Shown here one piece after another: positions 7,926 through 36,620 of a DNA stretch of 64,000 bases. Below the pieces are notes generated by a model. The model was not told where the DNA came from, made no database searches, and saw only the letters and a list, made by a program, of their open reading frames with translations. How positions within the stretch are numbered: position 1 is the stretch's first letter; the number at the start of each line of letters is the position of its first letter. Source of the stretch: Pocillopora damicornis (taxonomy: Eukaryota); assembly GCF_003704095.1 (NCBI RefSeq), contig NW_020843606.1, positions 186,001 through 250,000 of the forward strand. The letters run 5' to 3'. Both the position numbers and the translations under genes were made by a program.

Positions 7926-8909
7926 ATGGCTCGTTGTCCGTTTGAATTGACACTGAAGAACACAGGACGGATTGCATTTGGCGTTATCTTGGTAATTCAA
8001 GCAATTTTCCTCGCTTTCTATCCTGGCGAGTATGAAAATTCTAAATGGTACAGTTTATTAACAGTTTTCCTCCCAGCACTTGGTGCGTGGTCTTTGCTGT
8101 TATGTTTGCAGAAAGCCACACTTCGTTGGCTGTTATTAGTCTGGAGTCTCTACATTGCTGCTTTGATAGTGAATATCGGGATCATTTTTGGATTGGTTGG
8201 AGACAAACTTGGCACCAAGAAGTTCCCGAGCTTGGGTCTCTTAAAGGGAATTCTATGCCTCACGCCTCCTCTGTTATTACTGTTGCTACACAATGCAGAT
8301 GACCTGGATCGATCTCAAGAACGCAAAGATTTAGTGTTCAAGCTGTCTTTTCAAATGGCCATCGATCTGTTCGATGTTATTGACATGATTGACATTGTTT
8401 TGGATGACATAGGACGTGCGAATGAAGCTCAGAGCCTACCTGCAGATGTTATAGCCACATTAAACAAAACCCTTAAGGGGACTCTACCAAGCTTCACACT
8501 CAACACCACAGGTATATTAACCTCGGAATTAAACAAAAGCCTTGCAATACCTCCAGTATTTGGTAGAGTGATGATAGGAGTCGCATGTTTCAGTCTCATG
8601 TTGTCTATATGGCAATGGGCTGAAAACAAGCTCTCCACGACTGACACGGGGATTCAATTTCGAACAGCAGTTGCACGCAACGTTCTAGAAGTGATCTTCG
8701 TCAATTTCTTTTTCTTGGTCATCCGTGGAGTGGTTTTTTTTAGGTACAGCCAAGACGACTTTGTTTTTATAGCCAAGAATTTTATCGCAATAATTTTTTC
8801 AATTTTGGAAATTCACGCTCTTTGTCAATCGCATTCAACCACGTTTGTAAGTCTATGTAAAGTGGAATGGCAAAAATGTTCTGCGCGACTCAGAGAGTTC
8901 AAAGGGTGA
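7926..8909 (+). CDS. TMEM121/CECR6-like multipass membrane protein, subfamily A (intronless, 327 aa)
   Basis: About 7 hydrophobic segments. Family-like motifs LCLTPPLLLLLL, IDLFDVIDM, VNFFFLVIR and FIAKN. Confidence 0.8.
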   Translation: MARCPFELTLKNTGRIAFGVILVIQAIFLAFYPGEYENSKWYSLLTVFLPALGAWSLLLCLQKATLRWLLLVWSLYIAALIVNIGIIFGLVGDKLGTKKFPSLGLLKGILCLTPPLLLLLLHNADDLDRSQERKDLVFKLSFQMAIDLFDVIDMIDIVLDDIGRANEAQSLPADVIATLNKTLKGTLPSFTLNTTGILTSELNKSLAIPPVFGRVMIGVACFSLMLSIWQWAENKLSTTDTGIQFRTAVARNVLEVIFVNFFFLVIRGVVFFRYSQDDFVFIAKNFIAIIFSILEIHALCQSHSTTFVSLCKVEWQKCSARLREFKG

Positions 8910-9153
8910 CTGAAATGATGTATAACTCGCAGATAATGATTTAACCGAATCACAATTATTTTATAAGAATTAATAAGTGTAGGAAAAAACACTTCTCGGC
9001 GCCGTTCAAACATTTTTTTGGTATAACAACATGTGATGATTACAAACTTTCATAGTCCATATTGGTAATAAAAATCAATTATTGTGGTTTAGTTTTATTA
9101 CTGTTGTTCACTTTAGATAACGTAGTAAGTTGATTCGCTGTCTATGATTATAT

Positions 9154-9320
9154 TTGGAAGTATTCTGGCTGGTGGTTTAAACCTACGCCTACTTCAAGAA
9201 CTTATATGCATTCTGCAAGAAGAAATAGAGAATATCTATACTATCCATTTTTTTAATTATTTGCCATCTTCCAGTTCTTCTCTTTTGAACGGAACTACTT
9301 AAGCTGAAACTACGGTGGGA
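9154..9320 (+). repeat. Duplicate of the last intron end and last exon of the discoidin gene (copy of ~7159-7314)
   Basis: Shared TTTGGAAGTATTCTGGCTGGTG and TTATTTGCCATCTT.CAGTTCTTCTCTTTTGAACGGAAC...TTAAGCTGAAACTAC. Confidence 0.8.
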
Positions 9321-9880
9321 TTCAGCGTGCACTGAAGACGTGCGAGACCACTTCTTTAGTTGTGATGATTCTGCCAACATAATTTCAGAGTGGACATTAT
9401 TTCAGCTTATTGTCTCAGCATTGATTTTATCATGGCCTGATCGATTTTCTACCGCCAAATTAAAATTTACAATGAAGACCTCGTGAGTTCCATAATTTGA
9501 TAAACTGATTAATTTTTTGTTAGGAGAAAAAATAATGGCTTTGAAATAAATGAAAAATTAAAGTATTTGTACTCCATATAAGTTGAAAAGAGAGTTTTGG
9601 GTTGATATTTTGTGGTCCGACATGTTTGTAATTTGACGTCAGTTGAGGAAAATGCACTAATTTGTTGTTCGTTATTGTTGTTAGATATTTTTTCTTCACT
9701 AGATGGGGACAATTTGTTACTATATGTTTATAGATAAACGTTTTGGGGGTGTATATTTTCTCTGTTTTCATTCAGTAGCTNNNNNNNNNNNNNNNNNNNN
9801 NNNNNNNNNNNNNNNNNNNNNNNNNNNNNNNNNNNNNNNNNNNNNNNNNNNNNNNNNNNNNNNNNNNNNNNNNNNNNNNN

Positions 9881-10334
9881 GTTGTTGCTTTTGAGTACTG
9901 GAACAGATTCCAACAGCTACAGAGATCAAATCTGGCAGATATCCCTACGAATGGCTCTGGATCTCTTTGATGGAGTTGAAATGCTGGAAGTTATCATCGA
10001 AGAAAATGAAGTCAGCCATGGCGTTCCAAAGTCCTTTGAAAAAGCCATACTCGCTTTTGTCTGTATCAGTTTTATCCTCTCCCCATTGCAACTGGTTGAG
10101 ATAAAGTTAAGAAGTTCCAATAGGTGGGGATTTCTACATAGATGTAGAGAAGGTTTGCGAACAGCCCTACAGATCATCTGTGTTAATTGTGTGTTTTTGG
10201 GGCTTCGCATGTATCTATGGCGGGGCTATGGAAAAGATGCCTCTATTTTTATCGCTAAAAATGCTATTGTAATTTGCCTAGGCCTTTTCGAGGTATGTTC
10301 AATCGGTAAATGTTGTGGTTGTGACGATTATTGA
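9881..10334 (+). CDS. TMEM121-like subfamily B, C-terminal half (5' part lost in gap)
   Basis: Open frame with LDLFDGVEM, VNCVFLGLR, IFIAKN and a Cys-rich end KCCGCDDY*. Confidence 0.75.
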
Positions 10335-10509
10335 GCAGAATTTTACATAGAATCGCCCAGTAATCGGTATAAACTTGACAATCTTTCTGGGAAAACCATG
10401 GAAAAATTTGAAACAATTATCGTGAGCGTTTCATTAGAAGCAAATATCTTTAAATGATTTCATTTTTATCTTATACTCTCTTCTTAATATTAGTCTTGGA
10501 TTTAAGATA

Positions 10510-10999
10510 GAACTTGACTCGTTTTGGATTTGTTCTATGGACCAGATGTCTTGACGATGACCCTTTGCCTAACTCCGCTCCTTTTGTTGCTGTTGCTTAA
10601 CACATTTGAAACGAAAAGTAAAGACAGAGAGTTCTTATTAAAACTGGCCTTCCAAATAACATTAGATCTCTTCGACGGAATTTAAATGCTGCAAGTTTTT
10701 CTGGAGGGAAATGAACTTAGCATTCCCAAGCGCTTTAAGGCAGCTATCATTGCCTTCGTTTGCATAAGTTTTGTGCTTTCGAATTTTCAATTAGAGGAGA
10801 ACAGGATTTCAGTCTATTTACAAATACACAGCCTTCATCCGTATCACCCTTCAGATTTTACTCAGTAATTGTGAGTTTTTGGGCCTTCGTTTGGCTCTGT
10901 TCTTTAAGTTCAAGAGAGATGCGTCAATTTTCATTGCCAAAAATGGCATTTTGATCAATCATAGGATTTTGGAGATTTTTCAGTGTTGTAAGGGTTAGT
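10510..10999 (+). pseudogene. TMEM121-like subfamily C pseudogene, 5'-truncated
   Basis: Highly similar to 29901-30659. In-frame TAA after DLFDGI and later frameshifts. Confidence 0.8.
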
Positions 11000-11209
11000 N
11001 NNNNNNNNNNNNNNNNNNNNNNNNNNNNNNNNNNNNNNNNNNNNNNNNNNNNNNNNNNNNNNNNNNNNNNNNNNNNNNNNNNNNNNNNNNNNNNNNNNNG
11101 GCCGATGTGGCCGTTTACCTGAAAGATTTCTTCTGTTGGTAAAGATGAATGAGAATTTTGTAAATTTAAATTTACGTCCATGATTGTTTTTGTAATCATG
11201 ATTCAACGA

Positions 11210-11835
11210 CTATTTCCATCCTGAGCCTTAGCGCCAACCCACTTTGCGATTTTTATTGGGGAATTGTCCATTCCTTTATTTTCAGTCATGAATAAAGTCG
11301 GCTTTTCTTGTTAGTATAGGGCTTTTGTGTTTATATGATAAACAAAATAATACATGATTTTATAAATAATTGGTGGGGTGCTCTAAGTCATTTAAGTGTT
11401 TTAAAAACCTGAAAGTTTTTGTTTGATATTGCTCGAAGCAAAATATAAATCAACCGGATCCCAAATGAGCATTCTCTTCAAAACTCCAGTTTTCCTTTTC
11501 CCCCATTTTTTTTTCTTTTGTACAAAATTCATACAAACTACGGTGTTATACATCTTGAGCCTCCAGCGCCATCCCACTGTGCGTTTTTTTAAGGGAAATT
11601 GACGATTTCTTTATTTTTATTCATTAATAAAGTCGACTATTCTTGTCAGTAAAGGGCTATTGTGTTTATATGATAAACAAAATAATACAAGATTTTATAA
11701 ATAATGGGTGGGGTGCTTTAAGACATTTAGGTGTTTAAAAACCTGAAAAATTTTGTTTGATATTGCTCGAAACAAAATGTAAATCAACCGGATACTAATG
11801 AGCATCCTCTTCAATACTCCAGTTTTCCTTTTCCC
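11210..11835 (+). repeat. Tandem duplication of ~340 bp
   Basis: CATC.TGAGCCT..AGCGCCA.CCCACT...ATATGATAAACAAAATAATAC...AAATCAACCGGAT...CTCCAGTTTTCCTTTTCCC occurs twice (~11215-11505 and ~11550-11835). A related copy lies at ~26330-26420. Confidence 0.85.
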
Positions 11836-11864
11836 TAACTTTTGTCTTTTGATATTTTCTTACT

Positions 11865-12426
11865 TGGGTTAAACATGATAAAACCGAAGCAAGCCAACGC
11901 GAACATTGCTGAACTGAATGCTTTGGGTATTCCAAGGTCGTACTCTCTTCCTTCTAACACGATATGTATCATCTCGACTCTATCGAACAGATCGATGGTC
12001 ATGGGCAACCACAAATAGGAAAACAATCTCTGTTTCTTTATGATTTTCGTGTGAATCATCGAGATCGCCTGTGTTCGGCAATAGTAGTAGCAGAAGTGGT
12101 GTAATGCACAGAATCGCCTTAAATACGTTTGGACTCAAAAACTCGGTCTTGCTGATTCTATCTCCGAGCATTATTACTACCATTGCGATGTTTACAACCA
12201 AAGCCACGATATACAGACCCCAAATTCGAAACAGTCAACCAAGGTACAGCGATTTGAAATATAGACACACAATCCAAGCAACAACTGCTGAGCCGAAGGA
12301 AAAGGTTATGAAATACCAACTATATTTGCCATCATACTTCGCGAGATAAGCAGATAGAAGTATGCTCTGTATAGTTATCAGACCTAAGAAAGCCACTCTT
12401 CTGAGAAATGTTGAAAACGAAGCCAT
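11865..12426 (-). pseudogene. TMEM121-like subfamily D pseudogene
   Basis: MASFSTFLRRVAF... with an internal stop at ~12235, a frameshift near 12020 and 3' truncation. Paralog of 27155-27961. Confidence 0.8.
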
Positions 12427-12872
12427 AATATGTCTAACAGCTGTTTGAAACTAGAAGAAGCAAATTGTGTTGACTACTGCAATAGTAATTGATACTGTAC
12501 ATTTGTAAGAAAAACTTCGCAGTGAATGAGGAAACGCCTCATCTATCCTGATCAAATGATGCAAGAATGAATTACCCGAATATTCCAGAAGTTTAAATGC
12601 ACAGACTGATTGCATACGTAATTTGGTCACTGCTGAAGACTTGATATTCCTATGTAGCTTCCTTAATCAGCGATTCTGGCTTTTTATTTGTATTTGTTCA
12701 CATCTGCTTTTCTCGGAATAGATTACTCCACTGTATTGCACTTTCAAGAAAACTTTCTTGAAATCGGCGTAGAGTTTATTTCGATGCAATTATTTTAGCA
12801 GCAACTTTGTTATTGGACTTTCTTGAAGAAACGCTTATCGTAGAAAAACCTTTCAAAAAGGATATCTTTCTC

Positions 12873-13365
12873 ATGGCCTCATGCTTAGTCTATATTGGTA
12901 GATTCCTTTTCTTCGTCTTAGCAGGCCTCCAGGCCCACTCGTTGGCTTTGTATCTTGCAAAATACAAACAAAAAGATGGTTTCTATGGATTGGTCGCCCT
13001 GTACGCTTCTGCAATTGTTCTAAGGCTTTACATCGTGTTCGACTACAAGAAATTACAATTGTTATTAGCTGTTTGGACGTGCTATATCGTTGGTTACGTA
13101 ATCTTCGTTGAGATCATATTTGGAGGTGACAACCGATTAAAGATAACCTTGACAAAGCTAAATTCTTCGGTCCAAACATTCTAAAGACGACACTTTGCCG
13201 TGCCCTGGTGATTATTTCGTTGCTTTCAAGTACGGGAAGGGATTGCATCGTCTACCGAGACCTGATCTGGCAGTTGCCTCTCCGAATGACGTTGGATCTC
13301 TTCGATGGAGTGGAAAAGCTGGTCATTATCGAAGAGAACAAATAGAGCCATGGCGATTAGTAAGC
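12873..13365 (+). pseudogene. TMEM121-like subfamily B pseudogene
   Basis: MASCLVYIGRFLFF... with a frameshift near 13130 and a deletion of the C-terminal third. Confidence 0.8.
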
Positions 13366-15276: not shown

Positions 15277-15865
15277 ATGTCTCAATCGTTGTTGGCTTGC
15301 CTCCTTCGCTTCGTATCCAACACGCTACGAAAATCAAAATAACTGGTATACTTTTCTTCTCTCTACATCCCATCCTTGACTCTCTGGTTTATCGTTGTGC
15401 CCGGATCTCTTGAAGATGACACTTTGCCTAATTCCGCTCCTTTTGTTGCTGTGGCTTAACACATTTGAAACGAAAAGTGAAGACAGAGAGCTCTTATTAA
15501 AGCTGGTCTTCCAAATAACATTAGATCTTTTCGACGGAACTGAAATGCTGCAAGTTATTCCGGAGGTAAATGACCTTGGCATTCCCAAGCGCTTTGAGGA
15601 AGCTATCATTACCTTCGTTTGTATAAGTTTTATGTTTCGCATTTTCAATTAGTTGAGAACAAGATTTCGGACAAGTCTATTAACAAATAATCAGCCATCA
15701 TCGGTATCACCTTTCAGTTTTTACTAACTAATTTTGTGTTTTTAGGCCTTCGATTGGCTCTGTGCTTTAAGTTCAAGAGAGATACGCCAATTTTCATGGC
15801 CAAAAATGGCATTTTGATCATTCATTGGATTTTGGAGATTTTTCAGTGTTGTAACGAAGAGCTAA
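15277..15865 (+). pseudogene. TMEM121-like subfamily C pseudogene
   Basis: Inverted paralog of 29901-30659 including its upstream region. Internal deletions and frameshifts; ITLDLFDGTEM is retained. Confidence 0.8.
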
Positions 15866-19420: not shown

Positions 19421-19739
19421 ACAAAATCGATTTCAGATGAGATCAAGCATTTTAACCGTGTAAAGACCTACATGTACAGGGGTGTTGTGAGGGCAAAAAA
19501 AGACATTTGTGCAAAAAAACTGTACAATGGCACTGATTAGTGTAAATTGTTATGCGTGGATACGTATTCAGTAAGGATAGATCTAGACTAAACGGAACAT
19601 AATTTGCCTGCTAGTGGATACAATTTTATAGTATCTCTCACTCGTGAGAGATATTGTCGACACTCAAGGATAGATTCGTATTAACCCGCGGCCAAGTAAT
19701 ACCTTCTCAGTGTTGTCAAAAAGATAACTAACCAGACTG

Positions 19740-20085
19740 GTCTGAAAGTGGTTCTTTGCATTACGCCTTTGTTTTTTCGGTTTTAGTGAATCGCATACAG
19801 CCAGAAATCTAGACGAATCTCAAGAGTACCAGCAGTTGTCCGTTCAGTTATCTATCGATCTTTTCGGTGGAGTTGTTATCTTGAGCATTGTAACCGACGG
19901 CAAGGAAAATAGTCTCGGAATTTCGAAAGAGTTTGGGACAGGATTGATCGTCATGGCTTCCTTGAGTTTTCTGTTGACCCTGTTACAAAATGGTGGAAAC
20001 AACCTCGGCAACATTGATAGATGCGTTTCGCGTAGTGAAAAAGCGGTTATTGCGCCTTATACACAATCAAAACAGAGTATTGTAT
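19740..20085 (+). pseudogene. TMEM121-like subfamily F fragment
   Basis: LKVVLCITP...SIDLFGGVVIL...GISKEFG...SFLLTLLQ, disrupted. Confidence 0.7.
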
Positions 20086-20532: not shown

Positions 20533-21332
20533 TTAGTAATCGTCAGAACTAGAACACTCGCAGATTGATCATATCTCAAAGAGATCAAGGCAAATGACAA
20601 TAGCATTTTTGGCAATAAAAATGGATACATCTTTCTCGTAGCCCCGCCGTAGATACATACGAAGCCCTAAAAACACGCAATTAACACAGATTATTTGTAA
20701 GGTTGTGCGCAAACCAGCTGTACATCTGCGAATTTTCCACCGTTCGGAACCTCTTATTTTTATTTCGACTAGTTGTAATGGAGACAGCAGAAAGCTGATA
20801 CAGACGAATGCAAGCACTGCTTTTTCAAAGCCTTTAGGAACGCCATGGCTGAATTAATTCTCTTCAATAATGACATCCAGCATTTCCACTCCATCGGAAA
20901 GATTCAACGCCATTCGGATGGAAAACTGACCGATCAGGTCTCGGTAGACGATGGAATTCGTTCCCGTACTTAAAAGCAACAACAGAATCAATGGGGCAAG
21001 GCAAAGTGTCGTCTTTAGAATGTTTGGACCAAAGAATTTTACTTTGTCGAGGTTATCTTCAATCGGTTCGTCACCTCTAAATATGATCACGACGAAGATT
21101 ACGAACCCAACGATATAGCACGTCCAGACAGCAAATATAATAACCACTGTAATTTCTTGTCGTCGCACATGATGTAAAGCCATAAACCAACTGTAGGTAT
21201 GAACAGGACAACCAATTCATAGAAACTATCTTTGTGTTTGTATTGTGCAGGATACGAAGCCAGCGAGGAGGCCTGGAGGCCTACTAAGACGAAGGAAAGG
21301 AGTCTGCCAACGGAGACTAAGCATGAGGCCAT
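20533..21332 (-). pseudogene. TMEM121-like subfamily B, full-length pseudogene
   Basis: Three ORF pieces (21099-21332, 20854-21183, 20569-20817) join into a full protein with one frameshift and two stops. DLFD has degraded to NLSD. Confidence 0.85.
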
Positions 21333-21777: not shown

Positions 21778-22548
21778 ATGGATTGTGGATTGGTTTTGGT
21801 CGGTCGTTTTCTTGCCGTTCTTCTTCTGTGCGTCCAATGTGGGTTCCTGACAGCTTTTCCTGTCTGTTACAGGGATGATAAACGTCTAGTATCCTTGCTA
21901 CTTTTGTCTTTTCCTGCCCTGATTTACTATGGGATTTGTCTGGCTACTGGTGGAGAACTCCGTAAAGTTTTCCGCACTTGGGGTCTCTACATTATTTTCG
22001 GTTTGATCCCTTACATCGCAATCATTTTTGCGTTGTGCGGAGACGTACTCAACAAGGACAGTTTTCTCAGCCCGACCTGTTTGAAAGTGATCCTGTGCAT
22101 CACGCCTGCTGCCTTTCTCATTCTGGTGAATACAGCGAGCGATTTGGGCAAATACGAAGACTACAAAGCCCTGGCCTTGAAGCTGTCAGTCGTAATAACA
22201 ATAGATCTTGTCGATAGCGTCGAGATGTTGGATATTGTGCTCGATGAAAGGGAGAACAGTGACGGAATCCCAAAAGAGTTTGGATATGCAATGATAGCAG
22301 CGGTGTGCTTGAGCTTTCTGTTGACTTTGCTGCAAATTGCACACATAGGAACCGTCTCTCTTCGCAAAGAAGTGGCGATTCTCGCATATGTTTTGCAGAT
22401 ATTTTTCGTGAATTTGCCTTTCATGGCAATGCGCGTGGTTGTAGTTAAAAACAACAAAAAAGACGATAATGAGTCCATCTTCATCACAAAGAATCTGATC
22501 TCCATCTTTCTCTCCGCGATGCAGATCTATTGGATCTGGAAGAGCTAA
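21778..22548 (+). CDS. TMEM121/CECR6-like protein, subfamily E (256 aa, intronless)
   Basis: Intact ORF with LCITP, IDLVDSVEM, VNLPFMAMR and IFITKN. TATA-like CTATATAG about 50 bp upstream. Confidence 0.8.
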   Translation: MDCGLVLVGRFLAVLLLCVQCGFLTAFPVCYRDDKRLVSLLLLSFPALIYYGICLATGGELRKVFRTWGLYIIFGLIPYIAIIFALCGDVLNKDSFLSPTCLKVILCITPAAFLILVNTASDLGKYEDYKALALKLSVVITIDLVDSVEMLDIVLDERENSDGIPKEFGYAMIAAVCLSFLLTLLQIAHIGTVSLRKEVAILAYVLQIFFVNLPFMAMRVVVVKNNKKDDNESIFITKNLISIFLSAMQIYWIWKS

Positions 22549-23118: not shown

Positions 23119-23293
23119 ATTTTAACCGTAGACGATGAATCCAAGCAAAAACTGCTGGGCCAAAGGAAAAGGCCATGAAATACCAATTGGATTTGCCTTC
23201 ATGCTTAGCGAGATAGGCAGACAGAAAGATGCTCTGTGTAGTTATCAGAACGAAGAAAGCCAATCGTCCGAGCCTTGTTAAAAACGAAGCCAT
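23119..23293 (-). CDS. TMEM121-like subfamily D, N-terminal part running into a gap
   Basis: MASFLTRLGRLAFFVLITTQSIFLSAYL..., open up to the gap. Confidence 0.6.
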
Positions 23294-23719: not shown

Positions 23720-24053
23720 ATGGCCTCGTGCTTAGTCTACATTAGCAGGTTCCTTTTCTTCGTCTAAGTAAGCCTCCAGGCCTACTCGGTGGCTTCCGCA
23801 AAATACAAACACAAAGATAGTTTTTATGGATTGTTCGCCCGGTTCCGTTCTGCAATTGCTCTAAGGCTTTACATCATTTTCGACCACAAGAACTTACAGC
23901 GGTAATTTGGTGTTTGGACGTGTTACATCGTTGGTTTCGTAATTTTCGTTGTGATCATATTTGGAGGTGACGAACTGATTGAAGATAACTTTGGAAAGGC
24001 ATATCTTTGAGATGTGATCAATCTGCGAGTGTTGTGGTTGTGACGATTGCTAA
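23720..24053 (+). pseudogene. TMEM121-like subfamily B pseudogene with large internal deletion
   Basis: ATGGCCTCGTGCTTAGTC... with stops. It jumps from EDN to the C-terminal FEM*S segment near 23995. Confidence 0.8.
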
Positions 24054-24539: not shown

Positions 24540-24870
24540 ATTGTGTTTAAGGCGCAATCACCACTTTTTCACTACGCGAAACGCATCCATCAATGTTGCC
24601 GAGGTTGCTTCCGCCATTTTGTAACAGGGTCAACAGAAAACTCAAGGAAGCCATGACGATCAATCCTGTCCCAAACTCTTTCGAAATTCAGAGACCATTT
24701 TCCTTGCCGTCGGTTACAATGCCCAAGATAACAACTTCACCGAAAAGATCGATAGATAACTAAACGGACAACCGCTGGTACTCTTGAGATTCGACCAGAT
24801 TTCTGGATGTGTGCGATTCACTAAAACCGAAAAAACAAAGGTGTAATGCAAAGAACCACTTTCAGACCAG
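24540..24870 (-). pseudogene. TMEM121-like subfamily F fragment (inverted copy of 19740-20085)
   Basis: Near-identical reverse complement of 19740-20085. Confidence 0.7.
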
Positions 24871-27154
24871 TCCGGTTAGTTATCTTTTTGACAACACTGA
24901 GAAGGTATTACTTGGCCGCAGTTAAATACGAATTTATCCTTGAGTGTCGACAATATCTCTCACGAGTGAGAGATACTATGAAATAGGTCCGCAATACGTA
25001 CATGTGTGGCTTACGAAATTGAGCTGCTTTTTTGTATCTGGTGTCTCATTGGGTTTCTATTAGAAGAGCTAATATCTGATTAAGATTAGATAGTTTTCAA
25101 TATTGATCCTGTTCATCAATAACACAAGATAACTAGCAAATAAACGTCCTGAATTGTTCATTCTGAAGATGAGAGTTATTGGCCAAACTTTGTTATAGAG
25201 GTCTCATTTTGACAACAAAGGTTGCACGCGTAACCTGAGGATTTTGGAAATGAAAAAACATCAACATAATCTCCCATAGTGGCCTGATAGATTCAGTCAT
25301 GATCATATTTACGTAACGATTGTAGGTTGATTGTCTTTTCCAAGGCAAGTGATGTGAAATGAACTCTAGGGAAGCATTTCATATGAATATTTTTAACATT
25401 TTGTGTACCAGTACAAGAGGACAAAACTTTGCAGAAGGGCAGGGACATTTGGGAAATGATGTAATCTACATTAGAAGCCATCGGTAGCTTGATTTGGTTT
25501 GAATGTATGACCAATTTTGGACAATACATACATGTAAAGTAACACAATGCTGATTGCAGGTTTCCTTTGTCCATTAGGGCATAAAGTTCAACTTTCAGTT
25601 GGTTGAGAGCAAAACGTTTATTATAATTATTGTATTTAGGTTTTGTGGGACTGTATTTTCAATAAAGAACACAGAAAAATTTAGTTCAGGTAGGTAGATA
25701 TGAGGTTGCAAATGGAAGAATCTAGGGGAAAAAGATAGGTGCATTACAAGATCAGAACACAAGCAATATTTTAATGAATTATATGTTGAGATAAGTACTC
25801 TGAAGTAACATTACATTAACGTTGCTAATAATTTTAAACCCAATAAGATTTACAATTTGACCTGGAGGTTTTATTTAACAGAAAGTTCAAAAGAGATAGA
25901 GTGTCACCATAATAGATTTCAGGAACAGTACTCAGAGACATAACTTAAACACAGCAGAGTTCAGTGTACAGGCAAGTGCATGATGGTATCATATGTTTAA
26001 ACTATCAGAAGCTTTCAAGTTTTCTTATTACTGAAAGTGTAATTTCATGCCAGTGAGTCAACCAAATTAAAGTTATGTGGATGAAATGTAATTTTCTTCC
26101 TGACCATGTGGTATAAACAGAAATTCAGGATAAACAACGTTCCGGTAAATGACTTACGTGAAAAGTGACCGCACAGAGAGTCAATAATGACTCCTAAGTT
26201 TCAATGTGGCGCGANNNNNNNNNNNNNNNNNNNNNNNNNNNNNNNNNNNNNNNNNNNNNNNNNNNNNNNNNNNNNNNNNNNNNNNNNNNNNNNNNNNNNN
26301 NNNNNNNNNNNNNNTTAAAACTTGAACTTGAAATTTTGTCTGATATTGCTCAAAACAAAATGTAAATCAACCGGATCCCTTATGAGCATTCCCTTCAAAA
26401 CTCCAGTTTTCCTTTTCCCTACATTGTTTTTCTTTTGTATTCTCATATTTTTCGTGACAAAGATAGTTTTTCTTAGAAATAGATTAATGATATTGTTCAT
26501 CAACTGATACAAGACTTCAAGTTCTCTTGAAAAGAGTGAGCCCCACAGATTTTCTTTGAAGAAATGTGAATTTATTCACATGTTTAATTCACTGTCCTAT
26601 TCGTGGCTGATACATGTATAGAATATAGTTCCATTATTCACGAGGAGAAAAAAAATTGAGGCAAAGTCATCTAGGTACACCTGATACAAAAATTAGCTTC
26701 CAGGTCTGCGCAATTTACAAGCCCTTGAGTTCAAACATTCTTTCTATCACATGCCTACGACTGGATACAACACAATAAATTTATCTCTATAAGATATATT
26801 TGAGATACATGAAAAAAGTAATTGTAAGCTTTCTGTACAGTTTGCAGAACCGAAAAAATAAAACTGTTAAGGAAATAAAAATAGGCTACTCGTATCAGAG
26901 TAGAGGAGACTGAATAAAATGGGAATTGTATAAGATATATCTGAGATACATTAAAAAATTAATTTTTAGCTTTATGTACAGTTTGCACAGCCGAAAAAGT
27001 AAAACTGTAGAGGAAATGAAAAACAGTCTACTTCTATTAGGTTACAGGGGACTAATTAAAGTGGCAATTTGTTGCTTGCAAAATGTGATATAAAAATAAA
27101 AGTGCATTTTGAGATCTTAACATGAAATCGAGGAGCTACAAAAATATACCTATT

Positions 27155-27961
27155 CTAAACTACTCGGTCTTCTTGTTTGGCCCGATGTAAACGGAGTAGA
27201 TTACGAATTTCCAAAATGGAAAGTACTATTGCTATGCCATTCTTGGCAATGAAGATCAACTCGTCTTTGCCAAACATAAAGAACACCACCGCACGAATAA
27301 TCAAGAATGGTAGATTTACGAAAGCTATTTGAACAATATTGCGGCATAATGCGGTACGGATACGAATTTCCGGCCCCTCTCCGGTAAGTTTGATTTCTAC
27401 CATTTGCCAAGGAGATTCCAATATACTGAGGCAAGCTAACACGATCATTGCTGTACTGAAAGCTTTGGGTATTCCAAACTCGTGCTCTCTTTCTTCTAAC
27501 ACGATATCTATCATCTCGATTCCATCGAACAGATCGACGGCCATGGGAAAACACAACTTGGAAACAATCTCTCTTTCTTCGTTGTCTGAATCATCGAGAT
27601 CGCCTGTGTTTAGCAACAGTAGTAGCAGAAGTGGTGTAATGCACAGAACCATCTTCAATACATTTGGTCCTAAAAACTCGGTCTTGTCGATTCTATCTCC
27701 GACTTTTCCAAATACCATTGCGATGTTTACAACCAAAGCCATAATATACAGGCCCCAAATTCGAAAGAGGCAACCAAGGTACAGCGCTTTGAAAATTAGA
27801 AGAAGAACCCAAACAAAAACTGCTGGGCCAAAGGAAAAGGCCATAAAATACCAATTGGATGTGCCTTCATACTTCCCGAGGTAAGCAGATAAAAACATGC
27901 TCTGTGTAGTCATCAGACAAAAGAAAGCCAATCGTCCGAGCCATATTATAAACGAAGCCAT
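27155..27961 (-). CDS. TMEM121/CECR6-like protein, subfamily D (268 aa from MASF; the ORF-track extension uses a non-ATG start)
   Basis: Intact ORF with LCITPLLLLLLL, VDLFDGIEM, VNLPFLIIR and IFIAKN. Confidence 0.82.
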   Translation of the reverse strand: MASFIIWLGRLAFFCLMTTQSMFLSAYLGKYEGTSNWYFMAFSFGPAVFVWVLLLIFKALYLGCLFRIWGLYIMALVVNIAMVFGKVGDRIDKTEFLGPNVLKMVLCITPLLLLLLLNTGDLDDSDNEEREIVSKLCFPMAVDLFDGIEMIDIVLEEREHEFGIPKAFSTAMIVLACLSILESPWQMVEIKLTGEGPEIRIRTALCRNIVQIAFVNLPFLIIRAVVFFMFGKDELIFIAKNGIAIVLSILEIRNLLRLHRAKQEDRVV

Positions 27962-28288
27962 TATTTTATGTATGAAAGCTGTCTGAAACTGGAAGAGGCA
28001 AATTGTGCTGACTAATGCAATAGGAATTGATACCGTATATTTGCATGAAAAATTAAGCAGCGAATGAAATAACGCCACAAAGATCTTGATCAAATGATGC
28101 TAAAGGGAATTACCCCAATATTTCAGAAGGTCACATGCAAAGACTGATTGCATAAGTAATTTGGTCACTGCTGGGGACTTGATATTCCNNNNNNNNNNNN
28201 NNNNNNNNNNNNNNNNNNNNNNNNNNNNNNNNNNNNNNNNNNNNNNNNNNNNNNNNNNNNNNNNNNNNNNNNNNNNNNNNNNNNNNNN

Positions 28289-28622
28289 AGAGCACGACTT
28301 TGGAATACCCAAAGCATTCAGTACAGCAATGATCGTGTTGGCTTGCCTCAGCATGTTGGTATCTCCCTGGCAAATGGCAGAAAACAAACTCACTAAAGAT
28401 GGGCCAAAAATTCGCTTCCGTACCGCATTATACCGCAGTATTGTTCAAATAGTTTTCGTTAATCTACCATTCTTGGTTATTCGTGCGGTGGTGTTCTTTA
28501 TGTTTGGCAAAGACGAGTCCATCTTCATTGCCAAGAATGGCATAGCAATAGTACTTTCCATTTTGGAAATTCGTAATCTTCTCTGTTTACGTCGGGTTGA
28601 ACAAGAAGACCAAGCAGTTTAG
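28289..28622 (+). CDS. TMEM121-like subfamily D, C-terminal part after a gap
   Basis: EHDFGIPKAFSTAM...VNLPFLVIR...IFIAKN, open to the stop. Inverted relative to 27155-27961. Confidence 0.7.
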
Positions 28623-29900: not shown

Positions 29901-30659
29901 CTAATCCTTACAACACTGAAAGATCTCCAAAATCCCATGAATGATCAAAATGCCATTCTTGGCGATGAAAATTGACGCATTTCTCTTGAACTTAAAGAAC
30001 AGAGCCAAACGAAGGCCTAAAAACACACAATTACCGAGTAAAATCTGAAGGGTGATACGAATGACGGCTAAGTACTTGTAAATAGACGTGTCCAAAAACC
30101 TGTTCTCCTCCAATTGAAAATGCGAAAGCATAAAACTTATGCAGACGAAGGCAATGATAGCGTTCTCAAAGCTCCTGGGAATGCTAACTTCACTTTCCTC
30201 CAGAATAACTTGCAGCATTTCAATTCCGTCGAAGAGATCTAATGTTATTTGGAAGGCCAGCTTTAATACGAGCTCTCTGCCTTTACTTTCTATTTCAAAT
30301 GTGTTAAGCAACAGCAGCAAAAGGAGCGGTGTTAGGCAAAGGGTCATGGTCAAGACATCTGGTCCAAAGAACAAATCCTTCTCGATTTTTTCTTTGATTC
30401 GCCCAAATATTACTCCAATTATGGGCACTAAAGCAAGCCATACGTACAGACCCCAAACGGAAAATACCCAGGTGATGAGCTTTTCATTGCACACGACGAG
30501 AAACCAGAGAATCAAGGATGGGATGTAGAGAAGAAGTAAAGCATACCAGCCATTTTGATTTTCGTAGCGTGCTGGATACGAAGCGAAGGAGATATACTGA
30601 AGGATCATCACGATGAAGAAGGCAGTACGTGCAACCCAAGCCAACAGCGAATGAGTCAT
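29901..30659 (-). CDS. TMEM121/CECR6-like protein, subfamily C (252 aa from MTHSLL)
   Basis: Intact ORF with LCLTPLLLLLLL, LDLFDGIEM, GNCVFLGLR and IFIAKN. Confidence 0.82.
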   Translation of the reverse strand: MTHSLLAWVARTAFFIVMILQYISFASYPARYENQNGWYALLLLYIPSLILWFLVVCNEKLITWVFSVWGLYVWLALVPIIGVIFGRIKEKIEKDLFFGPDVLTMTLCLTPLLLLLLLNTFEIESKGRELVLKLAFQITLDLFDGIEMLQVILEESEVSIPRSFENAIIAFVCISFMLSHFQLEENRFLDTSIYKYLAVIRITLQILLGNCVFLGLRLALFFKFKRNASIFIAKNGILIIHGILEIFQCCKD

Positions 30660-32340: not shown

Positions 32341-34111
32341 AAGACTTCGTTGGATGAAATAATCTCAATGAAGGGCAAAATTAAATAACCTATATTTCAT
32401 TCAAAACATGAAAGAAAACTTCCATTGGTAAATTATAGCATGGAGAAAAGTAAGAACAATTTGTTTCATAACACTTTTTGCAATGTTGAAAATCATCTTA
32501 TCATCAGAACATAAGAATAATCACATAAAACTACCTCAATCAAGGCCATTCAAGAAGATTCATTATTTTCAAATAAACAAATACAGTAAAAGTGGGGAAA
32601 CAATTAAAATTGCTTTTGCAGCTAGAAACTAAATCTTAGACTCATAACTCAGGTGAAATGAAGCAAAATGTTAACACCCGATGCCATGGTCGGAGCAGTT
32701 ACACAGTTTTATGTAAGTCAACAATAATAATGGAAATGATGACCCAGATATGCAGAAGGAAATGTTCAGTGATTGAACATAAACTTCATGATCATGATCT
32801 TTCAGAATAAAAGTTCCTGCTCAGCGTGCATATCCTGTTTAAGTTCACTGACACACTGAATTAAATTGACACACTAATTTGAAGCACAGTGAAATATCTG
32901 TAAAGAGATATTAGGGATTTATTGAAACAAAACAATAAAATACAATACAAAAAGTCCAAAAGACCATCTAAAAAAATAACATAAAATATTATATTTATTT
33001 ATGCTTTCAGTAAGTCATATGTAAGGCAGATGAATTGATAGTTCCTTGACACAACATGGAATTGAATTTGTTGGAAACCTAACACCTGCATCTCATTAAT
33101 TTTCATGAAACGATACTTAAACAATTCAACACATTTGTTGTCTGCTTTTTCTAAATTGCGATTAAATCTGGACTTTGATAGATGAAGGAATAGCCATGAA
33201 GAGGATATGCTACAGTATGTACCACTAAAACCAAATTATATTTTTGTTTATTGAAACCCAATTTAGTTTATTTACATTTCATGTCTATAAAAAAAACTAC
33301 TTGCGTACTTGAATTGGTAAAAAAAAAANNNNNNNNNNNNNNNNNNNNNNNNNNNNNNNNNNNNNNNNNNNNNNNNNNNNNNNNNNNNNNNNNNNNNNNN
33401 NNNNNNNNNNNNNNNNNNNNNNNNNNNNCAACAACACCGAAGCTTTTTCAACGCAATTGTGTTTATTTACAATTAGAGCAAATACTAACTCGTTACACCT
33501 CCAAAAACAGAAAGTACAATTTTTGAGTGGCAAAATAAATAATACTTCGCAAAGAGAAATCTTCTCACAAACACAAATGTTGCAGTAACATAAACAGGCC
33601 CCAAACTGATGAATGAGACCCTCTTGCCTCGTCAGCACTATTTTGTACAATACTTCTGTTTTAATTGTGTGTAAGGCGCTGTCGCCTGCAGCTAAATCGG
33701 AGTGTCATCCCCTAATTTTATTCACAATATTTCATTTCGTTCCGTTTCTTTAGCGCCTTTGAACATTGAACATTAAAATAACTAACGTGCAAAGATCATG
33801 AACGAGGTAGGCAATGCTTACAATTTCTAAAACCTTTTTATTTTCGTTTTCCTTCCAGAAAAAAAAATTATTATTTGCTAAAATTCGACTCTGTCAAAAA
33901 AAGTTGGACTGATAGCTGATGATGATTTGAAAGACCCGAGAGATATCTTGTTTTAATGATGAGGTGTGATCGTACTTTCAGTTTCAAACTTAACAAGCGG
34001 CTGTTGATAATCGTCGAAATACATCCTCCTTAAAAAGTCTCAGTTTCCTTTCCTTAGATGCAATTTCAAATCGAATACGTCTCTCTGTTCAGTTAATTTC
34101 ACATACTCAAA

Positions 34112-34894
34112 TTAGCTCTGTCGGATCCAGTAGATCTGCATTGCTGAGAGAAAGATGAAGATCACATTCTTCATGATGAAGAGGGACTCATTCTCATCTT
34201 TGTTGTACTTTATAACAACTACCAGTCGCATTACCATGAACGCCAAATTTACAAAGATGATTTGCAAAACATTTGCGAGGATTACCACTCCTTTGCGAGG
34301 GGAAACGGTCCCTTCTTTGAGTTTATTCTTCGCAATTTGCAGCAGAGTCAACAGAAAGCTCCCGCACGCCACTGCTACAATCGCATATCCAAACTCTTTT
34401 GGGATTCCGTGACTGTTCTCTCTCTCATCGAGCACAATATCCAACATCTCGACGCCATCGACTAGATCTATTGTTGTCACGATTGACAGCGACCAGACCA
34501 GGGTTGTATACTTTTCATGTTCACCCAAATCACTCGCTGTATTCACCAGAATGAGAAAGACAACAGGGGTGATGCAAAGGATCACTTTCAAACAGGTCGG
34601 GCTGAGAAAATTATTCTTGTCGAGTACGTCTCCACACAATGCAAAAATGATGACGATGTAAGGGATCAAACCGAAAAAAACGTAAAGACCCCACGTACGG
34701 AACACTTTATGGAGTTTTGTTGCAGTAGTCAAACAAAAGACATAGTAAACCAGAGTGGGAGAAAATAACAGTAGCAAGGGCATCAGACGAAAATCATCCT
34801 TATACCAGACAGGAAAGGCTGTCAGGAACCCACACTGGACGAACAGAAGAAGAAAGGCCAGAAAACGACCGACCAAAACAAATCTGCAATCCAT
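34112..34894 (-). CDS. TMEM121/CECR6-like protein, subfamily E (260 aa)
   Basis: Intact close paralog of 21778-22548 with IDLVDGVEM, VNLAFMVMR and FIMKN. Confidence 0.82.
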   Translation of the reverse strand: MDCRFVLVGRFLAFLLLFVQCGFLTAFPVWYKDDFRLMPLLLLFSPTLVYYVFCLTTATKLHKVFRTWGLYVFFGLIPYIVIIFALCGDVLDKNNFLSPTCLKVILCITPVVFLILVNTASDLGEHEKYTTLVWSLSIVTTIDLVDGVEMLDIVLDERENSHGIPKEFGYAIVAVACGSFLLTLLQIAKNKLKEGTVSPRKGVVILANVLQIIFVNLAFMVMRLVVVIKYNKDENESLFIMKNVIFIFLSAMQIYWIRQS

Positions 34895-36299
34895 TCTTCG
34901 CTTTTCTCTTTAAATTAAAGGGTTGTGTCTTTGTCGAAGGCTATATAGTTTTGAAATCTGCAGTGTAATCGTTTTCGATTCGGAAATTACGTTATCTAAA
35001 AAACATCTGCAAGGGAAACATCCCTAGTAGTAATTAACTTCTTTTTCGTCATAAAATGCTTAGGGTTAGGGTTACGGCTAGGGCACAAACAAATTACTAG
35101 CTATAGAGGTAAATAAGCCACAGCTTGTATTTTTTGCAGGAAGTTTCGTTTCTGAAGGGGAGCTTCCCGAACACATTTGTTTCATTGCACCATCACCGAA
35201 AATGAGATTCATGAATGTTCCTTTTAAAATTGGTAAAGTTCCCAGTTTCATTTTCGATGGTATTATCAATGGTATTATCAGGGAATGACGAAATTGTGGA
35301 AATGAACATAACAACGGAGAACAAGTTCTCGCATTGGTTCGCATTTTTCATCATTAGCCGAGAATCTATAAAATACGCTCATTCCCTGTCCGCGATCAAA
35401 GTAAAAAATTTCAAAGAAATCCCCGACAAGCAGTAAATTCATGGGTTGCGAGCTCGTCCCTAGGGTCTCCTCTCTTCCAGACGAAAAAAAAAGACAAGGG
35501 AGATGTCCCCTGGGACTTTACCTGGAAGCGAGGTTGAATTTACCGGTTTTCGTGAAATAATTTCCTTAAAGGATTCCCCGATCATGGCAACAAGAACGAC
35601 TTATGATTACTAAAAAAATCAAGCAAGAGGTCAACTGCTTTATTTTAAGATTTGGGCAAATTTTTCTCCAATGTTTCTTTGTAACAAAGAAAGTCAAAAC
35701 GTTAAAAAATACTGATAAGAACTGGTACAGGTTTTACTAATTTAGACTCAGAGAGTGCCTTTGATACAAATTAAAGCTACATATTTTTTCGCTGACAGAA
35801 GGATACAATTTATCTAGTTTCAGTTTAAATAGAATTTCATAGTAGAGGATTCAATACCAGACTAATGAACTCAGGATACAATTCCACCAATGGAAATGGT
35901 ATCATATGATACACAGGTGATAGAGTCATAGATCTCGTCGGAGTTATTTTATCCATTGAATTTCAACACCTGGTGTATGAATGAATTCTTAAAAACTGAA
36001 ATATACGCCTTAATTTTAAAGCTTTCAAACACACGCTCTTCATTGAAATATATTGGTAAATTAGAGGAGAAAGAATATCACTCTGCAGACGATGTCAATG
36101 CCACAGTTACAATTCACTCTTGGTTCTTAATCCAGTAAATCTGTTAGGCAGATAGAAAGGTGGCGATTCCATTCTTTCAATGGAAATAGACTCGTCTTTG
36201 ACTTGTATTTGATAAACATTACTAGACGCATAATCATGAATGGCAAATTCACCAGAACAATCCGAAAAAAGTCACCGCTTTTTCACGAGGCGAAAAGCT

Positions 36300-36620
36300 T
36301 CCATCAATGTTGCCGTGATCGTTCTCCACCATTTGTAACAGGGTAAACAGAAAACTCAAGGAAGTCATGACAATATGGAACCAATCCTGTTTCAAACTCT
36401 TTCGAAATTCCGACACTATTTTCCTTGCCGTCGATTACAATGCCCAAGACATCTACTCCGAAAAGAGCGATAGTTGAACTGAACGGACAACACCGTTGCT
36501 AACCGCTGGTACTCTTGAGATGCGTCCAAATTGATGGCTGTATTCATTGAAAACCGAAAAAAACAAAAGGTGTAATGCAAAGATCACTCTTACATTGTTC
36601 GGCCCAAGAAAGCCGTACTT
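36300..36620 (-). pseudogene. TMEM121-like subfamily F fragment
   Basis: Reverse strand reads GFLG...ITPF...MNTAINLDASQEYQRLATVLSVQ...GKENSVGISKEF with frameshifts. Confidence 0.65.

What the first reader, a model, noticed from the sequence alone, without database searches (positions are those of the whole stretch)
7926..36620. Large tandem array of ~17 intronless TMEM121/CECR6-like membrane genes in six subfamilies undergoing birth-and-death evolution
Seen in sequence: 5 intact ORFs (A 7926, E 21778, D 27961, C 30659, E 34894), 3 gap-truncated open copies and about 9 pseudogenes within 29 kb. All share LCxTP, D-L-[FV]-D-xx-[DE]-M, N-xx-F-xxx-R and F-I-x-K-N. Established: these motifs match the poorly characterised TMEM121/TMEM121B (CECR6) family, which is low-copy in vertebrates. 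Inference: deep subfamily divergence with recent duplication and loss is typical of immune, allorecognition or chemosensory families. The array sits among a discoidin receptor, a TRIM-NHL relic and a serpin, and may be an undescribed cnidarian membrane effector or receptor system.
Basis: partly seen in the sequence, partly recalled or inferred. Interest (0 to 1): 0.85.

Follow-up and report, generated by a model that had tools for sequence, protein, structure and literature searches.

The report
Coral TMEM121-like membrane gene cluster
A stony coral (Pocillopora damicornis) carries a real, fast-turning-over cluster of at least 17 intronless TMEM121-family membrane-protein genes, about half of them broken. 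The family's amplification in corals is already listed in a published table, and its function is still unknown.

Summary
The window holds 17 PF14997 (CECR6/TMEM121) copies at 7926-36620: 5 intact ORFs, 3 cut by gaps and 9 broken. They fall into about five or six subfamilies. The genome is Pocillopora damicornis, and this divergent short type occurs nowhere else in the assembly.

Independent assemblies (Tara Pacific scaffolds, a gapless 339-kb contig, an NCBI chromosome) reproduce the same pseudogene lesions. They do not collapse the array: the gapless contig has at least 22 copies over at least 53 kb.

They also show that most 100-N joins in the window are not collinear with those assemblies. 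Two blocks are inverted and one is relocated, so gene order and strand across gaps cannot be trusted, and 17 is a lower bound.

Birth-and-death evolution is supported by lineage-specific clades, pseudogenes, copy-number differences between haplotypes, and dN/dS of 0.16-0.35 for old pairs against 0.35-0.73 for young pairs.

The cluster is catalogued, though never analysed. Noel et al. 2023 list this orthogroup (OG0000470) among those amplified in corals.

An immune or allorecognition role is untested. The predicted 8-helix fold has no solved relative, and expression could not be checked.

The same window carries an earlier scan note on the head-to-head pairs; no other genome's DNA was noted.

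The parts
7926..8909 (+). Copy 1, subfamily A, intact 327 aa. It has a 40-aa insertion in loop 5 with three N-x-S/T sequons.
   Evidence: (76.7 bits). The orthologue is broken in Tara scaffold L007 and is an intact 319-aa ORF in the gapless contig.
9882..10334 (+). Copy 2, subfamily B. Open C-terminal half (HMM 113-255) starting at gap 9781-9880.
   Evidence: The counterpart is a complete 265-aa ORF in L007, L013 and L016.
10527..10995 (+). Copy 3, subfamily C pseudogene. It is 5'-truncated (HMM 94-257), with a stop at 10683 and a frameshift near 10810.
   Evidence: It is 90% DNA-identical to copy 15. The same three pieces are seen in L007 and L016.
11874..12426 (-). Copy 4, subfamily D pseudogene (HMM 1-182; a break after HMM position 59, a frameshift, 3'-truncated). 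Head-to-head with copy 5.
   Evidence: Identical lesions in L013.
12873..13336 (+). Copy 5, subfamily B pseudogene (HMM 1-156; frameshift, truncated). It lies 446 bp from copy 4.
15296..15858 (+). Copy 6, subfamily C pseudogene (internal deletion of HMM 45-96, frameshift).
19721..20066 (+). Copy 7, E-like relic fragment (HMM 95-206).
   Evidence: It is part of a 985-bp inverted duplication with copy 12 at 90.8% identity. The tree places it in the E clade.
20572..21332 (-). Copy 8, subfamily B pseudogene. Full length but with one frameshift and one stop. Head-to-head with copy 9, 445 bp apart.
   Evidence: (1 TGA, 1 TAA). Same lesions in L013 and L016.
21778..22548 (+). Copy 9, subfamily E, intact 256 aa.
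   Evidence: (84.9 bits). The exact protein occurs on 19 other contigs.
23129..23293 (-). Copy 10, subfamily D. The first 55 codons are open, then it is cut by gap 23019-23118. Head-to-head with copy 11, 432 bp apart.
   Evidence: The counterpart in gapless contig L021 is an intact ORF.
23726..24007 (+). Copy 11, degenerate subfamily B relic.
   Evidence: weak. It is 80-82% DNA-identical to copies 5 and 8.
24556..24883 (-). Copy 12, E-like relic. Inverted duplicate of copy 7.
27155..27961 (-). Copy 13, subfamily D, intact 268 aa. This protein was modelled.
   Evidence: (105.4 bits). The exact protein is in NCBI nr.
28290..28622 (+). Copy 14, subfamily D. Open C-terminal 110 codons starting at gap 28189-28288.
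   Evidence: 82% aa identity to copy 13. The counterpart in L021 is a complete 270-aa ORF lying tail-to-tail with copy 15.
29901..30659 (-). Copy 15, subfamily C, intact 252 aa.
   Evidence: (95.1 bits). Logan contigs from three runs cover 30853-29391 collinearly.
34112..34894 (-). Copy 16, subfamily E, intact 260 aa. 73% aa identity to copy 9.
   Evidence: (95.3 bits).
36123..36620 (-). Copy 17, heavily degraded relic and last copy of the array.
   Evidence: Also present before the serpin in L021.
37341..38495 (+). Intronless serpin gene (384 aa). It marks the right border of the array.
   Evidence: PF00079, 404.7 bits. Same neighbour in L021 and L022.

Best explanation
This is a real, lineage-specific gene cluster of the CECR6/TMEM121 family in the stony coral Pocillopora damicornis. 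It evolves by birth and death.

How it changes (shown). Units of 1-3 kb are copied, inverted and recombined within the locus. Each unit carries an intronless gene, often paired head-to-head with another across a spacer of about 440 bp. Some copies stay under purifying selection and about half decay. Gene content differs between haplotypes and species.

What the genes encode (shown). The intact genes encode compact proteins of 252-327 aa with eight predicted helices. They keep the family's conserved core: LCxTP in helix 4, a D-L-F-D-x-x-E-M acidic stripe in helix 5, N..F...R in helix 7 and F-I-x-K-N in helix 8. They lack the 80-100-residue C-terminal tail of the canonical coral TMEM121 paralogues. 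Variation falls on helices 1-3, loops 5 and 6, and the short tail.

How they probably work (inferred, about 0.3). The conserved charged and polar residues would form a binding or conduction site inside the helix bundle, for a cation or a small polar ligand. Under this reading the array diversifies the periphery of one conserved membrane module rather than a classical ectodomain receptor.

Assembly caveat (shown). The window's scaffold mis-orders or mis-orients several contigs of the array at its 100-N joins, or differs there by real rearrangement. It also under-counts copies.
For: Family membership: Pfam PF14997 at 77-105 bits for all intact copies, and 30 of 30 alignment members match.

Copy map. 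The genome-wide search finds this short type only on this contig. Elsewhere there are three canonical long paralogues and two or three divergent singletons.

Reality of the array: contigs match independent assemblies at 98-99.98% with identical pseudogene lesions. The gapless contig has 11 intact and 11 broken copies over at least 53 kb.

Birth and death. The tree has starred subfamily clades. The E clade includes a Desmophyllum gene, while most Desmophyllum copies cluster on their own. Duplicated DNA blocks are 74-91% identical. Copy A is intact here but broken in L007, and B-type copies are broken here but intact elsewhere. Two scaffolds of one Tara sample carry 2 versus 1 E16-like genes. 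NG86 dN/dS is 0.16-0.27 for old pairs and 0.35-0.73 for young pairs.

Protein: AF2 model with pLDDT 82 and pTM 0.81, eight helices. Helix 4, helix 5 and helix 8 are the most conserved segments, and Q20, D143, D146, N216, R223, K240 and N241 are at least 95% conserved. The tail is absent from array copies, and a canonical paralogue's tail shows a C2HC zinc-finger hit.

Published record: OG0000470 is listed as amplified in corals, averaging 9 genes against 1 in other hexacorals, with a tandem-duplicate ratio of 0.86-1.0.
Against: No direct evidence that any copy is transcribed or translated.

The ion or ligand-site idea rests only on conserved residues and a predicted fold. That fold has no significant solved relative: Foldseek E > 0.1, and VIA Z <= 9.4, which is within noise for helical bundles.

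The order differences could partly be real structural polymorphism rather than scaffolding error. Some blocks of the comparison assemblies are only 91-95% identical to the window.

dN/dS values are pairwise NG86 estimates, dS is saturated for old pairs, and gene conversion was not modelled.
Confidence: 0.75

Rival explanations
1. This is a diversifying recognition family (immune, allorecognition, symbiont or chemosensory receptors). The copies are surface receptors whose variable parts are under positive selection, and the repertoire differs between individuals for that reason.
For: Birth-and-death dynamics and haplotype-level copy-number variation. Within the D clade, dN/dS by partition reaches 0.7-1.45. 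57 of 268 positions vary among D-type proteins that are 92-97% identical. The A clade has a loop-5 insertion of 23-40 aa with 1-3 N-glycosylation sequons, which differs by indels even between near-alleles. Noel et al. file the orthogroup under 'cell surface/transmembrane receptor', but that label comes only from domain names.
Against: Whole-gene dN/dS is below 1 for every pair tested (0.88 for the near-identical D pair, which rests on only 10 differences), and most partitions are below 1. Outside the A clade all loops are 5-17 residues, so there is no ectodomain. The most conserved parts are intramembrane charged motifs, typical of a shared core activity. There are no expression, induction or localisation data. 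The fold is not GPCR-like (TM-score 0.2-0.3).
Confidence: 0.15
2. The cluster is an assembly artefact: it is inflated by mis-assembly or by allelic contigs (haplotigs) stitched into one scaffold, and the true locus has only a few genes.
For: The window is a draft scaffold with eight gaps in or next to the array. Its contig order and orientation disagree with other assemblies.
Against: A gapless 339-kb contig, an NCBI chromosome-level record and several Tara scaffolds all carry the same copies, and more of them. Paralogue DNA identity is at most 91%, too low for alleles. The same blocks co-occur on single contigs elsewhere.
Confidence: 0.03
3. The locus is a neutral by-product of pervasive tandem duplication in corals. 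It is a graveyard in which the 'intact' ORFs are only copies that have not yet broken, with no function beyond that of the canonical paralogues.
For: More than half of the copies are broken. The functional state of a given copy differs between assemblies. Young D-type pairs have dN/dS of 0.5-0.9. Coral genomes carry 192 such amplified orthogroups.
Against: Subfamilies A, B and E keep open frames across dS of 0.4-1.9 with dN/dS of 0.16-0.35. An E-type gene is retained in Desmophyllum. The family is also expanded in Porites, Fungia and an octocoral. Core motifs are at least 95% conserved in 24 intact array proteins.
Confidence: 0.07

Closest known systems
Vertebrate TMEM121 (hole) and TMEM121B (CECR6), Pfam PF14997
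   Same: Same Pfam family, well above the cut-off. Same conserved motifs in helices 4, 5, 7 and 8. Multi-pass membrane protein with an intronless coding region.
   Different: The array genes form a separate clade from the canonical coral paralogues (100/99 support). They score 77-105 bits against about 180-189 for the canonical ones. They are 70-100 residues shorter because the cytosolic C-terminal tail is missing. They occur as a cluster of 17 to at least 22 copies, whereas vertebrates have two dispersed genes (own knowledge). The reported vertebrate role, a six-TM suppressor of ERK signalling, is cited in PMC9366253. It depends on features that were not examined here.
Orthogroup OG0000470 'CECR6/TMEM121 family' in Noel et al. 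2023 (Genome Biol 24:123, Additional file 2)
   Same: The same family is recorded as significantly amplified in corals versus sea anemones, mostly as tandem duplicates. Counts are 14 in Pocillopora meandrina (cf. effusa) and 8 in P. verrucosa.
   Different: It is only a row in a supplementary table. There are no subfamilies, pseudogenes, structure, selection or haplotype analysis, and P. damicornis was not among the species. Because the table counts annotated genes, broken copies are not included.
TMEM26 (Pfam PF09772)
   Same: A weak sequence link. 7 of 30 family members hit the Tmem26 model, best E 5.9e-5. One exon of a coral TMEM26 homologue aligns over the P-F-L-V-I-R ... D ... F ... K-N stretch of helices 7-8. 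The protein atlas finds mixed PF09772/PF14997 clusters.
   Different: hhalign probability is only 7.8%. The coral TMEM26 genes have several exons and are dispersed. Their exons were not joined for a full-length comparison, so homology is a lead and not a result.
Other tandemly amplified coral membrane families (for example rhodopsin-like GPCR orthogroups in the same paper)
   Same: Same genomic behaviour: genus-specific tandem amplification with variable copy number.
   Different: The fold is not a GPCR fold: Foldseek TM-scores of 0.2-0.3 at E > 0.1, and eight helices rather than seven.

Membership tests
CECR6/TMEM121 family (Pfam PF14997) | Score above the curated gathering threshold (25 bits) on the family HMM | tested here: met
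   76.7, 84.9, 105.4, 95.1 and 95.3 bits for the five intact ORFs. 30 of 30 alignment members match.
CECR6/TMEM121 family (Pfam PF14997) | Conserved motifs shared with canonical members (LCxTP, DLxD, N..F...R, F.xKN) | tested here: met
   These are invariant or at least 90% conserved columns in an alignment that includes three canonical coral paralogues. They are at least 95% conserved in 24 array-type proteins.
CECR6/TMEM121 family (Pfam PF14997) | Multi-pass helical membrane protein | tested here: met
   The AF2 model has pLDDT 82 and eight helices of 20-34 residues. hHole is described as six-TM in the literature, so the helix count differs or is unresolved.
Canonical TMEM121/TMEM121B orthologue | Groups with the canonical paralogues in a tree | tested here: not met
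   Array copies plus the C4316 singleton are separated from the C620 and C1906 canonical genes by a 100/99 branch. No vertebrate sequence was included.
Canonical TMEM121/TMEM121B orthologue | Long cytosolic C-terminal tail after the last helix | tested here: not met
   Array proteins end 0-30 residues after helix 8. Canonical coral paralogues continue for 80-100 residues with a CxxC...H...C motif, and one member hits zf-C2HC_2 at E 0.0023.
TMEM26 (PF09772) | Significant match to the family model or profile | tested here: inconclusive
   7 of 30 members hit, best E 5.9e-5. hhalign against one exon gives probability 7.8%.
Rhodopsin-like GPCR / 7TM chemoreceptor | Seven-helix GPCR fold | tested here: not met
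   The best Foldseek hits are GPCRs, but at E 0.26-1.6, TM-score 0.2-0.3 and rmsd 12-20 A. VIA Z is at most 9.4, inside the noise for helical bundles. No GPCR Pfam hit.
Birth-and-death multigene family | Clustered paralogues with pseudogenes, a mix of trans-species and species-specific clades, and copy-number differences between haplotypes | tested here: met
Birth-and-death multigene family | Positive (diversifying) selection on exposed sites | tested here: inconclusive
   Pairwise NG86 only. Whole-gene omega is 0.16-0.88, and D-clade partitions reach 1.0-1.45 on few substitutions. No site models were run.

The most novel reading that the evidence does not exclude
The short TMEM121-like genes could be a haplotype-polymorphic repertoire of surface membrane proteins. 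A conserved intramembrane acidic and basic core would conduct or bind a cation or small ligand. Variable outer parts, notably the glycosylated and indel-variable loop 5 of the A clade, would mediate self/non-self, symbiont or microbe discrimination. That would give the orphan TMEM121/TMEM26 superfamily its first mechanistic role.
Probability: 0.1. Interest if true: 0.75.

Novelty: new member of a known kind. Interest (0 to 1): 0.35.

Why it matters
TMEM121 and TMEM121B are conserved animal membrane proteins with no known molecular activity and no solved structure. A cluster of 17 to at least 22 natural variants that keeps one set of intramembrane charged residues while varying everything else is a ready-made mutational map. 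It shows which residues matter and offers compact, tail-less versions for expression and structural work.

For coral genomics it is a worked example of how draft scaffolds mis-order tandem arrays and how annotation fuses neighbouring copies. It also shows that the functional repertoire of such arrays differs between colonies.

It is nonetheless one of 192 orthogroups already reported as amplified in corals. Without expression or functional data it is of moderate interest.

Tried and rejected

Fold searches: Foldseek against the PDB gave nothing at E <= 0.001. VIA-align wide gave Z <= 9.4, with TMEM120A, designed bundles and GPCRs all tied, which is inside the stated noise for helical proteins. 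A PDB sequence search with the family profile gave 0 hits. No fold assignment is claimed.

Literature: searches for TMEM121 or CECR6 with 'coral', for PF14997, for the SRR run prefix and for the pdam gene id found nothing useful in main texts. One broad search was wasted on over-general terms, and one was rejected for a bad term.

Rejected readings. A palindromic head-to-head pair of copies 13 and 14 across gap 28189 was considered, but in three independent assemblies copy 14 lies tail-to-tail with copy 15 and the D block is elsewhere. Block 23119-26214 as a haplotig of the 4/5/7 blocks was considered, but it is only 82-91% identical, has a different order, and both occur on one gapless contig. 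Frameshifts as introns were considered, but the HMM pieces abut or overlap with no spacer.

Not done: the full-length TMEM26 comparison, because joining exons of a spliced model was left out and only one exon was compared. The upstream 'discoidin receptor' was not checked. Three long ORFs in 1-7300 had no Pfam hit.

Full report
1. WHAT IS IN THE WINDOW

The window is G000:C241:186001-250000 of a 234-Mb, 4393-contig assembly. A member of the 90%-identity protein cluster that holds copies 15 and 16, itself encoded in this window, is named RMX54707.1, pdam_00011536, Pocillopora damicornis.

Each matches Pfam PF14997 (CECR6_TMEM121) at 77-105 bits, against a cut-off of 25. tblastn with these five proteins and a six-frame scan with an HMM built from them give the same map. 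There are 17 copies, all between 7926 and 36620.
- Five copies are intact: 1, 9, 13, 15 and 16.
- Three are open but end in a gap: 2, 10 and 14.
- Nine are broken by stops, frameshifts, internal deletion or truncation: 3, 4, 5, 6, 7, 8, 11, 12 and 17.

The four motifs are conserved alignment columns. The three long 'ORFs' at 16053-17077 are read-through of N runs, not genes.

Copies lie on both strands. Three head-to-head pairs sit inside single contigs, with spacers of 446, 445 and 432 bp (4/5, 8/9 and 10/11).

2. GAPS AND LAYOUT

No intact ORF contains a gap. For copies 2, 10 and 14 the flank on the other side of the gap holds no remainder of the gene, so the two sides are not one continuous reading frame.

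I therefore compared the window's contigs with independent assemblies reached through exact or near-exact proteins:
- Tara Pacific metagenome scaffolds (L007/L008, L012, L014, L015, L017, L022/L023).
- A gapless 338,944-bp ENA contig (L013, L016, L021; 0 N in these three stretches).
- An NCBI chromosome-level record (L024).

Inside contigs the agreement is 98-99.98%. Across the joins it is not collinear:
- Block 11100-16211 is inverted relative to 16993-23018.
- The D block 26315-28188 follows 9881-10999.
- Block 23119-26214 is followed by the inverted block 28289-33328, which then joins 33429 and the serpin.
- At gap 9781 the other assemblies have about 3.3 kb with one more A-like gene.

The three kinds of assembly agree with one another. 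The window's scaffold order is therefore probably wrong at these joins, or else reflects a private rearrangement. Some comparison blocks are only 91-95% identical, so real haplotype differences also exist. I did not extract or report any letters for the gaps.

3. IS THE ARRAY REAL, AND HOW LARGE IS IT?

The pseudogene lesions of copies 3, 4, 5, 6, 7 and 8 recur with identical HMM piece boundaries in the independent assemblies. They are not sequencing errors.

The gapless contig does not collapse the array. In 108.8-138.3 kb and 146.2-167.0 kb of that record there are 11 intact ORFs of 252-334 aa and 11 broken copies, and the array ends at the same serpin. About 7.9 kb in between, and the region beyond the left end, were not seen.

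Two A-like genes of the Tara scaffold have no close counterpart anywhere in G000, where the best match is 51-54% identical. So 17 is a lower bound.

Elsewhere G000 has only three canonical long paralogues (on C620 twice and on C1906, about 180-189 bits, 336-358 aa), two divergent singletons (C4119, C4316) and one fragment.

4. SUBFAMILIES AND MODE OF EVOLUTION

Self-comparison shows duplicated blocks of 0.2-1 kb at 74-91% identity that include flanking DNA. A maximum-likelihood tree gives starred clades:
- C: copies 3, 6, 15.
- B: copies 2, 5, 8, plus copy 11 by DNA similarity.
- D: copies 4, 10, 13, 14.
- E: copies 9 and 16, with relic 7 nested in the clade. Relic 12 joins it as the inverted duplicate of copy 7. 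Relic 17 is assigned only by weak similarity.
- A: copy 1.

The whole array clade is separated from the canonical paralogues at 100/99.

A Desmophyllum pertusum gene falls in the E clade, so that subfamily predates the split of the two corals. Most Desmophyllum and Orbicella copies cluster near A and D as their own sets. Desmophyllum has its own array of about 68 kb, same-strand, with pseudogene fragments.

The functional state differs between assemblies. Copy A is intact here and frameshifted in L007. B-type genes are broken here and intact in L007 and L016. An E-type gene has a stop in L007. Two scaffolds from one Tara sample carry two versus one E16-like genes.

Pairwise NG86 dN/dS is 0.16-0.27 for old pairs, where dS is saturated, and 0.35-0.73 for young paralogues. 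It is 0.88 on only 10 differences for the near-identical D pair. By partition, the A, B and E pairs give 0.0-0.63 (mostly 0.1-0.5), and the D clade 0.10-1.45 (mostly 0.4-1.3).

This is the pattern of a birth-and-death family with relaxed constraint on young copies. It is not proof of positive selection.

5. THE PROTEIN

An AF2 model of copy 13 from a 30-sequence alignment has pLDDT 82 and pTM 0.81. It shows eight helices plus a small hairpin at 190-199.

By the positive-inside rule the basic tail is cytosolic. With eight spans this places both termini inside and loop 5 outside. That agrees with the A-clade insertion in loop 5, which carries 1-3 N-x-S/T sequons. The topology is inferred, not shown.

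Conservation among 24 intact array proteins is highest in helix 4, helix 5 and helix 8. It is lowest in helix 2, loops 1, 2, 5 and 6, and the tail. Q20, D143, D146, N216, R223, K240 and N241 are at least 95% conserved. In copy 13, helix 5 carries acidic residues at 143, 146, 149 and 152, which would lie on one face.

From this I infer a polar or charged site inside the bundle, which could be a cation or small-ligand site, at about 0.3 confidence.

No solved structure is related by sequence or convincingly by fold. A weak link to TMEM26 appears in three ways. Seven of 30 members hit PF09772, best E 5.9e-5. One TMEM26 exon shares the PFLVIR...D...F...KN stretch, at hhalign probability 7.8%. The atlas holds mixed clusters. 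TMEM26 exons were not joined.

The array proteins lack the 80-100-residue tail of the canonical coral paralogues. That tail has a CxxC...H...C motif and one zf-C2HC_2 hit.

6. WHAT IS ALREADY KNOWN

No main text in the library links TMEM121, CECR6 or PF14997 with corals. However, Additional file 2 of Noel et al. 2023 (PMC10236652) lists OG0000470 'CECR6/TMEM121 family' among the 192 orthogroups amplified in corals versus sea anemones. The adjusted p is 1.2e-5. There are 99 genes in 11 corals against 3 in 3 other hexacorals. The tandem-duplicate ratio is 1.0 in Porites lobata and 0.857 in Pocillopora cf. effusa.

Per-species counts are: Dendronephthya 10, Aiptasia 2, Amplexidiscus 0, Discosoma 1, Fungia 17, Orbicella 5, Goniastrea 6, Stylophora 3, P. 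meandrina 14, P. verrucosa 8, Porites 17, 17 and 9, Galaxea 0, Acropora 3.

The amplification is thus catalogued but not analysed. Vertebrate TMEM121 is described as a six-TM suppressor of ERK signalling in heart (references in PMC9366253).

7. EXPRESSION

Expression was not established. Logan contigs from three runs (SRR5963016, SRR5963055 and SRR5963057) cover copy 15 collinearly from about 115-195 nt upstream of the ATG. Two of them end at the same point, 510 nt after the stop. This looks transcript-like, but the library type is unknown and no poly(A) tail or canonical signal is present.

8. VERDICT

The family assignment and birth-and-death reading are supported. The layout across gaps is unreliable. 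The amplification is not undescribed. The proposed immune or recognition role is untested. I file it as a new member of a known kind, of moderate interest.

Noticed in passing
window 11100-16211, 26315-28188, 28289-33328 (contigs between 100-N joins): Relative to a gapless ENA contig, an NCBI chromosome record and Tara scaffolds, two of these contigs are inverted and the D block is relocated. This is probably scaffolding error in a repeat-rich array, but real rearrangement is possible.
   Followed up: yes
window 29907-30695 and 34166-34894: The public gene model pdam_00011536 (RMX54707.1, 531 aa) is a chimera. It joins copy 16 (residues 1-243) to copy 15 (residues 256-518) across about 3.5 kb.
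   Followed up: yes
window 16053-17077: Three long 'ORFs' (285-319 aa) listed by the ORF tool run through the N gaps at 16212-16311 and 16430-16992. They are artefacts.
   Followed up: yes
window 12427-12872, 21333-21777, 23294-23725: Head-to-head gene pairs share spacers of 432-446 bp that are 80-82% identical between pairs. The partners differ: D-type with B-type in two pairs, B-type with E-type in one.
   Followed up: partly
window 19623-20585 and 24001-24984: A 985-bp inverted duplication at 90.8% identity carries relic copies 7 and 12. It is the most similar repeat pair in the array.
   Followed up: partly
window 37341-38495: An intronless 384-aa serpin gene (PF00079, 405 bits) lies directly after the array. 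It is the same neighbour in the gapless contig and in Tara scaffolds.
   Followed up: partly
It was not scored directly here.
   Followed up: no
L001 (G000:C620:20000-29999) and L002 (G000:C1906): The canonical coral TMEM121 paralogues carry a C-terminal CxxC-x12-H-x3-C motif, and one hits zf-C2HC_2 at E 0.0023. Two of them lie about 3.6 kb apart on opposite strands.
   Followed up: partly
L022 and L023 (two scaffolds of Tara sample SAMEA5998463): One colony sample yields two versions of the C / 14 / E16 segment, with two versus one E16-like genes. This is apparent haplotype copy-number variation.
   Followed up: partly
window 8385-8545 (loop 5 of copy 1) versus L016:7520-8479: The A-type allele in the gapless contig lacks 17 residues of the glycosylated loop, removing one N-x-S/T sequon. 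The A-like paralogues have unrelated, Cys- and sequon-rich loops of 36-45 residues.
   Followed up: partly
L018-L020 (Logan contigs) on window 29391-30853: Three runs give contigs limited to copy 15 plus UTR-like flanks, and two share the same 3' end. This is a possible transcript, but the library type is unknown.
   Followed up: partly
L006, L009, L010 (Desmophyllum pertusum MU826855.1, 711.7-799.4 kb) and L011 (Orbicella): The Desmophyllum array is same-strand and head-to-tail, with spacing of about 4.5-5.5 kb and pseudogene fragments. It is flanked by VWA/tyrosinase and Peptidase_S28/VWA genes. The Orbicella copy sits next to a giant VWA/EGF gene.
   Followed up: partly
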